DNA of 64,000 nt from positions 372,001 through 436,000 of the forward strand of contig NW_020845863.1 of assembly GCF_003704095.1 (NCBI RefSeq), written 5' to 3'. The position numbers and the translations under genes are program-made. Source of the stretch: Pocillopora damicornis (Eukaryota). Shown in pieces: positions 6,514-13,387 of the stretch (its first letter is position 1; each line of letters starts with the position of its first letter). Under the pieces are notes generated by a model. The model ran no database searches and was not told where the DNA came from. It saw only the letters and a list, made by a program, of their open reading frames with translations.

Positions 6514-9500
6514 TCATTGGTATTCATCCTTGAACATCTGATAAATGTAGGTTGTTGTGACTAATAGCAATTGCATGATCCGCCACACTCTGTTGCCAGG
6601 TAACATGTCAGTAAAAGAAGTAACTTGGCTAAGGTATTGACGGTCTGTTGTTGTAGAGGCGATGGTGCGAACGACAACTTGTGTGTACACAAAAATAATG
6701 ATCAGGCGAAGGTAAAGAGGTCTGAGACCTTTTCTGTGGGGCTGGAGATCCACTTCCTGTAATGTACTGTATTCATCATCCTAAAAAAAAGACTAGATGA
6801 CTTTAATCAAATCCTTTCACTGCTACTAATGACCGTTAAGAAATCCCTTCTTACAGTATCAATACACAGCCATGCAGATAAGTGTAAAGAAGAAAATAAA
6901 CTAAGTAACAGCTAGAAGTTATTGTCCGGATATCACGCCAAACCACTGAAAAGAAAATGTATAGCTGCTCGACGCATGCACACCCTTGTTCTGTTAAAAG
7001 CAGCTGCCTTTATCCTACAATTTAAAGGTTTCTGATTGCCAATTTGAAATGAAAGCAAACAAAAGAAATTTATTCAGAGACAAGAAACAACCCAAACCCT
7101 TACTGGACAGACTTTAAAGGTAATTGAGCGAAGTTATTGAAATGTTTCAGTGTTACTACTTACCTCTTTCTGGTAAAAGAAAGTCGGAGTCAAAGTCACG
7201 AACCCAACAACACTTGCAATCCTCATCAAAGCAAGCAGAAGACACGTGGGTGAGATGAACATCGAAAATATTCTTTTAACACGCGTCGCATGCGCTGAAA
7301 AATGAAAACAAATCAATTAATCAAAGAGTAGATAGTGAAATTAGATATGACATCACGAGGTTGTTTATTTTCGCCACTTGCATTCAGCTTGTTATACGGA
7401 GTTAGGAAAAGCGTGAAGGAACTCGTTCACAATTGCTTCAGATTCAAAAGCTCGAAGTAAAGATAGACGCATTGACGAACAGGATGCGATTCAGCTTGGG
7501 GGTTTCAAAATGACAGGCCAAGACAAACCAACTGGATTCAAACGCAGCAACCCTCGAGTATTGTCTTTAAGGTACTTGATACGACTTTACGGAATGTCCT
7601 TAATAGTGGCATTACCCGGAAACCATTGGTCAGTTCACCGACAAATATCAGGCGAAGTGACCGGTAACCATAGTGGCTCTTAGGTGATTGAACCAGCCGC
7701 GTCAACCTGCTTTACATGTACAGTATTTACTCGGCTGTAAGTCCAGCTTTGCTATAAGACGAGATACCAAACTTGTAAAATGTAGAAGCAGTCTAACAAA
7801 CACGGAAAATAAAGCAAGAACAACTGGCTAATGACTGATTTTAATTTTTAACAAAAACCTGACATTTACTTAAAAGAAGTTACACTGAAAACTACCTATA
7901 TATCAAATGAAAGGTACATTAATTTCTTTCCTTCACGTTTACAGTTTCTAGGCAGCATCTTTACATACCTATGCTTACTTTCGCCATCGATAAGAACACC
8001 TTGAGGAATGAACGGTTATCGGCGACTTGTCTATTTAAAAAGCATAGGGTATAAAAAAAATTACGAAAGATTTGCAGCAGAGCCTATGTTTCCGACCGAA
8101 ACAAACTGCATATGTACACGAATAAATAAATAAATAAATAAATAAATATGCATAATAAATGAGATATTTTTTAGAGAGACAACACGGAAAAATAAAGGAA
8201 ACAGTAAACAGAAACCAGCAACGAACTCAACCCACAGTGACATATCACCTCAGCTTTATGGAGGTTTCGTCCAATTGTTAGTTCGTTCCCTACCACCTTT
8301 GCGAGTTCGCCCACTGTAGTGAAACAAATTGACCTTTACTTTCACAAGGTTGCCCCCAAATCCTTCTACTTGTGTCCTCACGGCAGATAGTATTTATTTT
8401 CAGTCGAAATCACAAAGTATTTTGATCAACATGCATTATTTTTCCTGAGAACCTCCAGTTACCCCATGTCGAAAATAAACCCTTGGCCACAGGGGTGGGG
8501 TACGATTATATTCTCTGTTGTTGACTTGTACTCTTTTCAACTCTTGAACATAGGCCCTTATTTGGAAGGATTTCAGGATCTTTACAATACTACTTTGTGG
8601 CCGGCCATTTCCCTAGACTGCCTATAACCGCAGTAGAGAGTAAAGAGGCCCTGAAGGGGGAGAGGGGTGGGGATAACAAAGGCTCTGTACACTTTCAAAA
8701 TTTGTACCCTTCACTAGATAAAAACGAAAAGGAACTCTGAAGGAGTGAACGGCATTCCAAGAAAACTTCTTATTTCAAACAAATCAGAAAGAATACAGGT
8801 ACTATGTAGAGGGCGGCAAAGGGTTTGTGCGTGACGCATGATTAAGCTCAAAATTAAGACGTGACACGTGAATTTCTCAGAAGGGCAAGGTAAGCTAAGA
8901 TCTGGAAATTGTCCTTTTAAATCCAAAATCCGAGTGAAATACTGCCTAAAGTGCATGTGTTCCGTGAATTTTNNNNNNNNNNNNNNNNNNNNNNNNNNNN
9001 NNNNNNNNNNNNNNNNNNNNNNNNNNNNNNNNNNNNNNNNNNNNNNNNNNNNNNNNNNNNNNNNNNNNNNNNNNNNNNNNNNNNNNNNNNNNNNNNNNNN
9101 NNNNNNNNNNNNNNNNNNNNNNNNNNNNNNNNNNNNNNNNNNNNNNNNNNNNNNNNNNNNNNNNNNNNNNNNNNNNNNNNNNNNNNNNNNNNNNNNNNNN
9201 NNNNNNNNNNNNNNNNNNNNNNNNNNNNNNNNNNNNNNNNNNNNNNNNNNNNNGCACATCTAAGGAATTTTCTTGCATCAATCTTTCCTGTTTCATAACC
9301 CAAACAATAAAAATCATCACAAGGCTAACAACAGCTGCATCAGATATGATACCTGAAGGAATACAGAAAGAAAAGAGGAAATGCAATAAAAATATATTTT
9401 TCTTTTAAGTAGGTCAAATATTCAACATTTGTCTAATAAACATAGGCAGGTAAAACTCAAACATCATATAAATAAATAGATAAATACTGACATTGGCTCC

Positions 9501-12500: not shown

Positions 12501-13387
12501 TAGTCACCACTACTGACAACAGTCCTTCTCAGGACTACACTCACTCAGACAATCAGACTACACTATCACAAATTTCATCTTATTCACGTGCATATGTACC
12601 CATAATTACAAAAGATAAAGCTTGGAATTCCCCTGAGACCTGAAGAGGGTTAACAATCTATACAAGCACACAAAGACTGTGAATATATATAAAAATCATA
12701 AATGAGAACTGCAGACAAAGAAGAGAATATGAAAGCGATCTTTGCAGTAATGAACACTGTTGGTTTTTTGTTAAGGTCCTTTTTCACTCCTACTTAAGTA
12801 GTGGGTAAAATTTCCGCACAGCCCCGTACTTCATTATGCAAATTAAGTTCTTGAATAGAGAAAACAATGACTAAAACAATACATTGCCATTGGGAAAACA
12901 GATTTGTTTTACAATAGTATGGGGCTGTGCGGAAATTTTACCAAGTAGTGTTCTCTATTGTGATAATCGCTATCATCTACAAGCACTCTGAACCTCAAGG
13001 TCTACTGAACAGAAAATACACAGTCGAGGACAGGGTCACTCAATTAATAATGGGAACACATCACAGTTTCCACAACGAAATGAGTGAAGGGATTGGATCT
13101 CGGAAACCTGACCAGACTAGTTGACAGGGCTAAAATGGACAGATATGAACAGGGCTTTGAGAATCTTTAAACAAAACATAACTTATAATTAATTAACCGA
13201 GGATTAGACTCACTACAACATCCGGTATTGCGGCGAGTATGGCAGAATGTACACACAAAAGCAAAGAAAATCTCACTGCTGCTTCAGTACCAAAGTATGA
13301 AAAATACAAAGGCAACGATAATGCTCCTGTTATCAATAAAATTGTGTTACTTGCTTTTACAAAGGTAAGGAAGCCCATAAACGCCAT
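6514..13387 (-). CDS. Multi-exon multipass membrane protein, ICE2 (SERINC superfamily)-like, ~375 aa
   Basis: Frame-consistent exons: 13387-13214, 11302-11084, 10486-10389, 10017-9953 (GC donor), 9352-(gap at 9253), 8030-7969, 7294-7164, 6780-6514. Every visible junction is phase-matched with AG acceptors. About 9-10 hydrophobic segments, with motifs colinear to yeast Ice2 as recalled. Confidence 0.75.
9714..9835 (+). repeat. Short tandem duplication (~58-bp unit x2) in an intron
   Basis: ctgtgacttgca(c/t)tctta..tatctcct..ga.ta.aa occurs twice in tandem. Confidence 0.7.
11570..12570 (-). mobile_element. Decayed Penelope-like retroelement fragment (RT thumb plus pLTR-like tail) in intron 1 of the ICE2-like gene
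   Basis: LYTTVYRKPTYT..SSYNPSSHKATTIRTLTQQAQ matches the YRKPTHT thumb motif of Penelope RTs; degenerate pLTR-like ctgataatgacttccactcaggttgttgaagc at ~12468-12500. Confidence 0.7.
12804..12942. mobile_element. 139-bp MITE with 27-bp TIRs and 8-bp TSD (Merlin-like)
   Basis: TIRs ggtaaaatttccgcacagccccgtact / agtatggggctgtgcggaaattttacc; flanked by identical aagtagtg (12796-12803 and 12943-12950); inserted within a SINE remnant. Confidence 0.85.

What the first reader, a model, noticed from the sequence alone, without database searches (positions are those of the whole stretch)
6514..13387. Hidden 8-exon gene encoding an apparent full-length animal homologue of the fungal ER protein Ice2
Seen: several short, unrelated-looking ORFs join through phase-matched splice sites into one ~375-aa multipass protein: MAFMGF..GALSLPLYFSYFGTEAAVRFSLLL..WCYLKLLQCSEFALLFVEAIQVVLVV..SILAISGVAYILSIYLSYHLF..WCAGVAVILTILVLFICLYKEEGIISDAAVVSL..[gap]..FISPTCLLLALMRIAS..LYLRLIIIFVYTQVVV..RVWRIMQLLLVTTTYIYQM. 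Inference from my recall of S. cerevisiae Ice2: the blocks line up in order with LLSIPISFKVGGLECGLSFT, WQFVLTKSTPFFTLSEGFF, SLLTSGGVITASLYYLYRIY, KGSVIESSLF, INPAVLINLCFRIL, SPCIVIAMYTHLIL and WGFWNWCNIF..LIYATEL. Established: Ice2 is characterised in fungi (ER biogenesis through inhibition of Nem1-Spo7/lipin, ER-lipid droplet and ER-PM contacts), belongs to the SERINC superfamily and has no recognised vertebrate orthologue. An intron-rich copy beside native animal genes would indicate vertical retention of an Ice2-type lipin-control or ER-lipid droplet module in cnidarians, which may matter for their lipid-body biology.
Basis: partly seen in the sequence, partly recalled or inferred. Interest (0 to 1): 0.85.

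Follow-up and report, generated by a model that had tools for sequence, protein, structure and literature searches.

The report
Coral Ice2-like membrane protein gene
The exons do form a real, expressed coral gene for a ten-helix membrane protein related to fungal Ice2, but the gene is already annotated and its invertebrate "Ice2-like" family, with cnidarian members, was published in 2021.

Summary
Window 13387-6514 (minus strand) carries one 8-exon gene. All seven splice junctions appear in RNA contigs, six of them in at least two studies and the GC-AG one in two. The exons are 100% identical to RefSeq XP_027047533.1, [quoted passage not shown], 376 aa.

The N gap hides only the last 16 nt of exon 5, its donor site and some intron. 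The frame is kept: 1131 nt gives 376 codons plus a stop.

The protein has about 10 hydrophobic helices and is single-copy. Anthozoan relatives match at E 1e-52 to 1e-200, and it is distinct from the genome's canonical SERINC genes.

Three of these relatives are listed by accession in Alli-Balogun & Levine 2021 as an "intermediate ICE2-like family", mostly invertebrate, sister to fungal Ice2 within the SERINC superfamily. They are Actinia XP_031573879.1, Stylophora LOC111322078 and Dendronephthya XP_028396389.1.

My own remote-homology tests were weak:
- Pfam ICE2 hits only the last exon, at 15 bits against a 25-bit cut-off.
- hhalign against SERINC gives P 0.057.
- The structure models were poor.

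So this is not hidden and not new, and it is not a Pfam ICE2 member. Function in animals is untested. Interest is low to moderate.

The parts
13214..13387 (-). Exon 1: ATG at 13387, 58 codons, phase 0. The donor GT is at 13213-13212.
   Evidence: Translation is 100% identical to P0017 residues 1-58. RNA contigs at 11302 read on at 13214 (table 7, compared with the sequence).
11084..11302 (-). Exon 2: 73 codons, phase 0.
   Evidence: 100% identical to P0017 residues 59-131. The RNA joint 10486/11084 is CT..AC on the + strand in 3 runs.
10389..10486 (-). Exon 3: 98 nt, ending in phase 2.
   Evidence: 100% identical to P0017 residues 132-163. The RNA joint 10017/10389 appears in X1 and X3.
9953..10017 (-). 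Exon 4: 65 nt, followed by a GC-AG intron.
   Evidence: 100% identical to P0017 residues 165-185. The RNA joint 9352/9953 appears in X1 and X3. The donor reads GC at 9952-9951.
9254..9352 (-). Exon 5, readable part (99 nt). It continues for 16 nt into the assembly gap.
   Evidence: 100% identical to P0017 residues 187-218. RNA contigs join 9254 to 8030 with 16 letters between in X1 and X3; X12 joins 9254 to 8029 with 17 (tables 5 and 5c).
8973..9253 (.). Assembly gap (N). It hides the last 16 nt of exon 5, its donor site and the start of intron 5. It was not filled.
   Evidence: One search shows the N run. The frame arithmetic comes to 1131 nt = 376 aa + stop.
7969..8030 (-). Exon 6: 62 nt, with phase 2 in and phase 1 out.
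   Evidence: tblastn of P0016 residues 224-244 gives 95% identity. The RNA joints 8030/9254 and 7294/7969 support it.
7164..7294 (-). Exon 7: 131 nt.
   Evidence: 100% identical to P0017 residues 246-288. The RNA joints 7294/7969 and 6780/7164 appear in 4 runs.
6514..6780 (-). Exon 8: 88 codons plus the stop at 6516-6514. It encodes the last two hydrophobic helices.
   Evidence: 100% identical to P0017 residues 289-376. It gives a weak Pfam ICE2 hit: E 0.014, 15 bits, profile positions 348-403 of 405.

Best explanation
This is the single-copy, expressed, 8-exon gene LOC113675192 of the coral Pocillopora damicornis. It encodes a 376-aa membrane protein with about ten hydrophobic helices.

The protein belongs to the 'Ice2-like intermediate family' already described by Alli-Balogun & Levine in 2021. 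That family occurs mostly in invertebrates and a few amoebae. It is sister to fungal Ice2 and lies within the SERINC superfamily.

Gene structure, expression, orthology and family assignment are shown or documented. The mechanism is inferred. Most likely it is an ER-membrane protein with a SERINC-type fold that handles membrane lipid. It may restrain the CTDNEP1-NEP1R1/lipin axis as yeast Ice2 restrains Nem1-Spo7 (my odds about 0.25). Or it may act as a SERINC-like lipid-binding or scrambling protein without that link (about 0.35). The remaining odds go to some other role. The confidence figure below is for identity and family, not for mechanism.
For: Gene model:
- Splice sites and phases fit.
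- All 7 junctions appear in RNA contigs from up to 4 studies.
- Seven exons are 100% identical to XP_027047533.1.
- The eighth exon was found by tblastn.
- The gene is single-copy. All 8 matches of P0016 in the 234-Mb genome lie at this locus.

Family:
- Relatives match at E 1e-200 to 1e-52 in Pocillopora, Stylophora, Porites, Oculina, Montipora, Actinia and Dendronephthya.
- XP_031573879.1, XP_022780854.1 (same gene as P0002) and XP_028396389.1 are listed by accession in the paper's Supplementary Table 4.
- The paper's text describes the family and its placement between Ice2 and SERINC.

Independent leads:
- A weak, collinear Pfam ICE2 C-terminal hit comes from exon 8 (E 0.014) and from the distant fragment P0011 (E 0.045).
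- ESM Atlas feature search was run with P0016 and with the 43%-identical P0024. The top named cluster scores 0.96 and 0.95; it is mostly Mollusca and 30% of its members carry PF08426. Fungal ICE2 clusters score 0.86-0.90 and Serinc 0.78-0.79.
- The Atlas model of P0024 matches the mollusc cluster at TM 0.81.
- About ten long hydrophobic helices are seen.
- The genome also encodes NEP1R1 and lipin.
Against: - No direct test here reached significance for Ice2 or SERINC homology.
- A six-frame PF08426 search of the genome found nothing. Its controls also rang nowhere, so it says little.
- Full-length orthologues give no Pfam ICE2 or Serinc hit.
- A profile of the family finds no SERINC among solved structures.
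- hhalign against four SERINC genes of the same genome gives only P 0.057.
- The AlphaFold models were poor, with pLDDT 37 and 47. Foldseek put human SERINC3 only at rank 4 with E 0.76.
- The family link therefore rests mainly on one bioinformatic paper and on language-model similarity.
- No functional data exist for any animal member in the paper library.
Confidence: 0.88

Rival explanations
1. One reading: a true full-length orthologue of fungal Ice2 that keeps its function as an inhibitor of the lipin phosphatase complex (CTDNEP1-NEP1R1 in animals). It would therefore control the ER-membrane versus lipid-droplet balance in cnidarians.
For: - The 2021 paper puts this family on a common branch with Ice2.
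- A weak collinear ICE2 hit falls at the C-terminus.
- Fungal ICE2 clusters are the next nearest named clusters in the Atlas.
- NEP1R1 and lipin are present in the genome.
- The yeast mechanism is documented in PMC8591542.
Against: - It fails the Pfam ICE2 cut-off, at 15 against 25 bits.
- It is about 115 residues shorter than yeast Ice2, by my recollection of 491 aa.
- The paper treats it as a separate family that is more SERINC-like than Ice2 is.
- No binding or functional test exists.
- PMC8591542 notes that metazoa make PC and PE mainly through the Kennedy pathway from DAG. The yeast logic therefore may not carry over.
Confidence: 0.22
2. A divergent paralogue of the canonical SERINC genes, a member of Pfam Serinc rather than anything Ice2-like.
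For: - It belongs to the same superfamily according to the paper.
- hhalign aligns the EEGIISDA...W block with the SERINC GLLQSS...W block, in the same order along both proteins.
- SERINC3 has the best TM-score and probability among the non-significant Foldseek rows.
Against: - The Pfam Serinc six-frame search finds 29 places in this genome, up to 425 bits, and none at this locus.
- No Serinc hit appears for any family member.
- The Atlas score to Serinc (0.78) is lower than to ICE2 clusters.
Confidence: 0.05
3. Not a functional gene: a chance chain of ORFs, a pseudogene, or a fungal contaminant or horizontal transfer.
For: - Several RNA contigs retain introns. One is X12 record 8, which covers 9254-11053.
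- The RNA libraries may contain DNA.
Against: - Spliced joints at canonical sites are seen in four studies.
- The frame is intact for 376 codons.
- Conservation is 98% to P. verrucosa, 78-92% to Stylophora and 43% to Actinia, with invariant motifs.
- The gene has 7 introns and sits in a 577-kb coral contig beside other animal genes.
Confidence: 0.01

Closest known systems
'Intermediate ICE2-like family' of Alli-Balogun & Levine 2021 (seeds include Nematostella XP_001631941.1, 395 aa; listed members include Actinia XP_031573879.1, Stylophora XP_022780854.1, Dendronephthya XP_028396389.1)
   Same: - Listed members are direct high-scoring relatives: E 1e-99 for Actinia, 78-92% exon identity for Stylophora, and 4e-52 for Dendronephthya.
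- Length is the same, about 376-395 aa.
- There is no Pfam domain above threshold.
- The host range is invertebrate.
   Different: Nothing of substance. Pocillopora itself is not in the paper's list, so this is one more orthologue.
Fungal Ice2 (Pfam PF08426), the ER protein that inhibits Nem1-Spo7 and so keeps Pah1/lipin inactive
   Same: - It has about ten hydrophobic helices.
- The C-terminal two helices align weakly and in the same order with ICE2 profile positions 348-403.
- It sits on the nearest branch according to the published phylogeny and by Atlas feature similarity.
   Different: - It scores below the family cut-off (15 against 25 bits).
- It is shorter.
- The loop after helix 7 is short, about 45 residues.
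- No evidence exists for ER localisation or lipin control in animals.
SERINC proteins (Pfam PF03348; solved SERINC3 7RU6)
   Same: It belongs to the same superfamily according to the paper. It has ten helices. A conserved G-hydrophobic-hydrophobic-polar-S...W block at helix 7 aligns with the SERINC GLLQSS...W block (not significant).
   Different: - There is no Pfam Serinc hit.
- The genome has its own canonical SERINC genes elsewhere, several of them intronless.
- The protein is about 60-100 residues shorter.

Membership tests
Intermediate ICE2-like family (Alli-Balogun & Levine 2021) | Members find each other directly by sequence search | tested here: met
   Searches with exon 8, P0008 and profiles A1 and A2 return the listed Actinia (1e-99), Stylophora and Dendronephthya (4e-52) proteins. 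Accessions were matched.
Intermediate ICE2-like family (Alli-Balogun & Levine 2021) | No known Pfam domain above threshold; length about 380-395 aa; multipass | tested here: met
   No family is over its cut-off in 8 members. The protein has 376 aa and about ten long hydrophobic helices.
Intermediate ICE2-like family (Alli-Balogun & Levine 2021) | Iterated profiles reach Ice2 first and then SERINC | tested here: inconclusive
   My capped searches stayed within Cnidaria. Only weak signals appeared: ICE2 at 15 bits and hhalign against SERINC at P 0.057. The Atlas ranks ICE2 above Serinc.
Pfam ICE2 (PF08426), fungal Ice2 | Score at or above the 25-bit gathering cut-off | tested here: not met
   Exon 8 scores 14.9-15 bits. 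The other exons give none, and full-length orthologues give none. The own-genome six-frame search gives none.
Pfam ICE2 (PF08426), fungal Ice2 | Ten transmembrane helices | tested here: met
   The hydropathy scan and the predicted helices give about ten long hydrophobic helices plus 2-3 short ones in the 207-257 loop. The topology was not determined.
Pfam ICE2 (PF08426), fungal Ice2 | ER localisation and inhibition of the Nem1-Spo7 (CTDNEP1-NEP1R1) lipin phosphatase complex | not testable with these tools
   I could show only that NEP1R1 and lipin genes exist in this genome.
SERINC (PF03348) | Pfam Serinc score at or above 24 bits | tested here: not met
   There are 29 Serinc matches in the genome and none at this locus. 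No Serinc hit appears in any member.
SERINC superfamily (fold level) | Structural similarity to solved SERINC structures | tested here: inconclusive
   The models have pLDDT 37 and 47. Foldseek places 7RU6 SERINC3 at rank 4 with E 0.76 and TM 0.28/0.32.

The most novel reading that the evidence does not exclude
Animal Ice2-like proteins may keep the yeast Ice2 activity and act as a brake on the CTDNEP1-NEP1R1 lipin phosphatase. That brake would exist in invertebrates, amphioxus included, and would have been lost in vertebrates. In symbiotic corals it could set the balance between membrane biogenesis (ER, symbiosome) and lipid-body storage.
Probability: 0.2. Interest if true: 0.6.

Novelty: already known. 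Interest (0 to 1): 0.2.

Why it matters
But both the gene model and the family are already public. The gene model is RefSeq LOC113675192. The family is the invertebrate Ice2-like proteins, with cnidarian members.

The open question is functional. No animal member has been studied. It is unknown how, or whether, invertebrates regulate the lipin phosphatase complex through an Ice2-type protein. A cnidarian with genetic tools, such as Nematostella, could answer that.

Tried and rejected
- **Six-frame PF08426 search of the own genome** found no match, but the control genomes were also silent, so it says little.
- **Pfam on each exon.** Apart from exon 8, only chance-level hits appeared (Col_cuticle_N, Adeno_E3_CR2, Bac_transf).
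- **Pfam on 8 full-length members.** Only sub-threshold DUF7549 appeared, with best E 8e-4 in 4 of 8 members. I take this as transmembrane-composition noise.
- **Profile against PDB sequences** returned only V-ATPase subunit e at E 0.4.
- **Two AlphaFold runs**, with 8 and 19 sequences, gave pLDDT 37 and 47. The Foldseek result on the better one is not significant, and I did not spend VIA-align jobs on so poor a model.
- **The three word-indexed homology searches and the metagenome scan** never left Cnidaria, so I could not build a deep alignment or fetch Ice2 sequences.
- **hhalign against four own-genome SERINCs** gave P 0.057.
- **Complex prediction was not used.** The coral CTDNEP1 and NEP1R1 are multi-exon genes, and I had no referenced full-length sequence for them.
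- **Joined spliced protein left out, as instructed.** Exons were searched one by one by reference. The database proteins P0016 and P0017 served as full-length proxies.
- **The gap was not filled.** The 16 letters that one search printed, and the matching residues of database proteins, are neither quoted nor translated here.
- Horizontal transfer from fungi, a SERINC paralogue and a chance ORF chain were all considered and rejected (see rivals).
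Full report
**1. Observation**

The finding lies on the minus strand. 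Three-frame translation and a search for splice motifs give exons with matching phases:
- Exon 1, 13387-13214: 58 codons, GT donor.
- Exon 2, 11302-11084: 73 codons.
- Exon 3, 10486-10389: 98 nt.
- Exon 4, 10017-9953: 65 nt, GC donor.
- Exon 5, from 9352 down to the edge of the N gap at 9254.
- Exon 7, 7294-7164: 131 nt.
- Exon 8, 6780-6514, with the stop.

tblastn of an orthologue from another species (P0016, Pocillopora verrucosa) found one more exon in readable sequence, exon 6 at 8030-7969. It matches residues 224-244 at 95%.

**2. The assembly gap**

Exon 5 is open up to the gap edge. The sequence left of the gap (8972 downward) is intron. The readable exon letters sum to 1115 nt. The phases require 16 more exon letters inside the gap: exon 4 leaves 1 base and exon 6 needs 2 before it.

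RNA contigs join 9254 to 8030 with exactly 16 letters in between in two studies. In a third study the same joint reads as 17 letters because of a boundary mismatch (tables 5 and 5c). The coding sequence is then 1131 nt, which is 376 codons plus the stop. This equals the length of the RefSeq protein of this species and of P. verrucosa.

So the two sides of the gap are continuous in frame at the transcript level. The gap hides about 5 codons, the donor site and some intron.

**3. Expression and splicing**

I laid contigs of four RNA runs from four studies on 6510-12500. They show these joints:
- 6780/7164: four runs.
- 7294/7969: four runs.
- 8030/9254: three runs.
- 9352/9953, the GC-AG intron: two runs.
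- 10017/10389: two runs.
- 10486/11084: three runs.

A loose end at 11302 in three runs continues exactly at 13214, the last base of exon 1, as read. All seven junctions are therefore supported.

Some contigs retain introns. One example is X12 record 8, which covers 9254-11053. These are unspliced RNA or DNA carry-over and do not contradict the model.

**4. Identity**

A full HMMER scan of 1.84 billion representatives with exon 8 gave 11 hits, nine of them at E ≤ 1e-10. Follow-up searches returned coral and sea-anemone proteins, all of them "uncharacterized".

Seven exon translations are 100% identical to P0017 = XP_027047533.1, [quoted passage not shown], 376 aa. The genome's size, 234,350,878 bases in 4393 contigs, fits my recollection of the published P. 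damicornis assembly.

The gene is single-copy. All eight matches of P0016 in the genome are these eight exons. It is therefore an annotated gene, not a hidden one.

Other full-length relatives:

| Species | Identity or score |
|---|---|
| P. verrucosa | 97-100% per exon |
| P. meandrina | 97-98% overall |
| Stylophora pistillata | 78-95% per exon |
| Porites evermanni, Oculina patagonica, Montipora capricornis | 54-66% |
| Actinia tenebrosa | 43%, E 1e-99 |
| Dendronephthya gigantea (octocoral) | partial, E 4e-52 |

The alignment shows invariant blocks such as EEGIISDA, W.MKQER.M, PL..RL..IFV.T and WR..Q.

**5. Family**

Pfam gives nothing above threshold. The only relevant signal is a sub-threshold ICE2 hit of exon 8: E 0.014, 15 bits against a 25-bit cut-off. 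It falls at profile positions 348-403 of 405, which is collinear with the C-terminus. A distant fragment, P0011, repeats it at E 0.045. Full-length members give no ICE2 or Serinc hit.

The ESM Atlas feature search was run with P0016 and, as a replicate, with the 43%-identical Actinia protein:
- The nearest named cluster scores 0.96 and 0.95. It has 141 members, mostly molluscan, and 30% of them carry PF08426.
- Two fungal ICE2 clusters follow at 0.86-0.90.
- Serinc scores 0.78-0.79.
- The Atlas's own model of the Actinia protein matches the mollusc cluster at TM 0.81-0.84 over 362 residues.

These are leads, not proof.

**6. Literature**

Alli-Balogun & Levine describe exactly this group (bioRxiv 10.1101/2021.01.08.425964; cited in PMC8591542 as Proteins 89:1240-1250). 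[quoted passage not shown]

The members find each other directly. On iteration they reach Ice2 first and then SERINC. In the published tree they share a branch with Ice2. One of the seeds was a 395-aa Nematostella protein.

The paper's Supplementary Table 4 lists Actinia tenebrosa XP_031573879.1, Stylophora pistillata XP_022780854.1 and Dendronephthya gigantea XP_028396389.1. The cluster look-up shows these are my P0024, an isoform of the same gene as my P0002, and my P0025.

The window's gene is thus the P. damicornis orthologue of published family members. No other paper in the library mentions the family, and no functional study of an animal member turned up.

**7. Further tests of remote homology**

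- The genome has many canonical SERINC matches, 29 places and up to 425 bits, with at least four intronless full-length copies. None is at this locus.
- I built a profile of four of these (A4) and compared it with the family profile (A2). hhalign gave only P 0.057. The aligned stretch is collinear and pairs the family's EEGIISDA...W block with the SERINC GLLQSS...W block.
- A family profile finds no SERINC among PDB sequences.
- Two AlphaFold runs on shallow alignments gave pLDDT 37 and 47. Foldseek on the better model has no significant hit. Human SERINC3 (7RU6) is rank 4 with the best TM-score, E 0.76.
- The secondary structure and the hydropathy scan agree on about ten long hydrophobic helices, with a loop of roughly 45 residues after helix 7 that holds short helices.

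**8. Mechanism**

Shown here or documented elsewhere: a conserved, expressed protein with about ten helices, from a family that the literature places between SERINC and Ice2.

Inferred: it is an ER-membrane protein that acts on membrane lipid. Yeast Ice2 inhibits Nem1-Spo7 and so keeps Pah1/lipin inactive, which favours membrane biogenesis (PMC8591542). The coral genome has NEP1R1 and lipin, so the target module exists.

The same paper notes that metazoa make most PC and PE from DAG, so the yeast logic need not carry over. I give about 0.25 to an Ice2-type brake on lipin activation. I give about 0.35 to a SERINC-type lipid-binding or scrambling role without that link. The rest goes to something else.

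**9. Verdict**

The Ice2-type affinity is right. The claims of a hidden gene and of unrecognised animal homologues are not, and the protein is not a member of Pfam ICE2.

Novelty: already known.

Exons were searched by reference, and database proteins served as full-length proxies.

I did not test it.

Noticed in passing
window 2930-5302 (+): An intronless 790-aa ORF for a copper amine oxidase (Pfam Cu_amine_oxid 4.6e-117, plus the N2 and N3 domains). It is convergent with the Ice2-like gene. A 4774-nt RNA contig (X1 record 1) runs on from exon 8 towards it, so the 3' ends may overlap.
   Followed up: partly
window 10228-10231 (inside intron 3): Contigs from RNA runs of three studies carry about 252 letters here that the assembly lacks (tables 5 and 7). 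This is either an insertion/deletion polymorphism or a collapsed repeat in the assembly.
   Followed up: no
G000:C1708:697418-698713, C4207:32791-34092, C4019:85705-88200, C1619:269928-271166: The coral genome has at least four intronless full-length SERINC ORFs. Two of them lie in tandem within one 930-aa open frame on C4019. Intron-containing copies are present as well. This looks like a retrogene-style expansion.
   Followed up: partly
window 23007-23600 (+) and 1015-1305 (-): A 197-aa DDE_Tnp_4 (Harbinger/PIF-type) transposase fragment, and a DsbA/thioredoxin-like exon with a signal-peptide-like start.
   Followed up: no
P0008 vs P0012 (Montipora capricornis); P0002, P0026, P0027 (Stylophora pistillata): Orthologues have annotated isoforms that skip the equivalent of exon 3 and neighbouring sequence, about 50 residues or two helices, or that use another first exon. 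I saw no such joint in the Pocillopora contigs.
   Followed up: no
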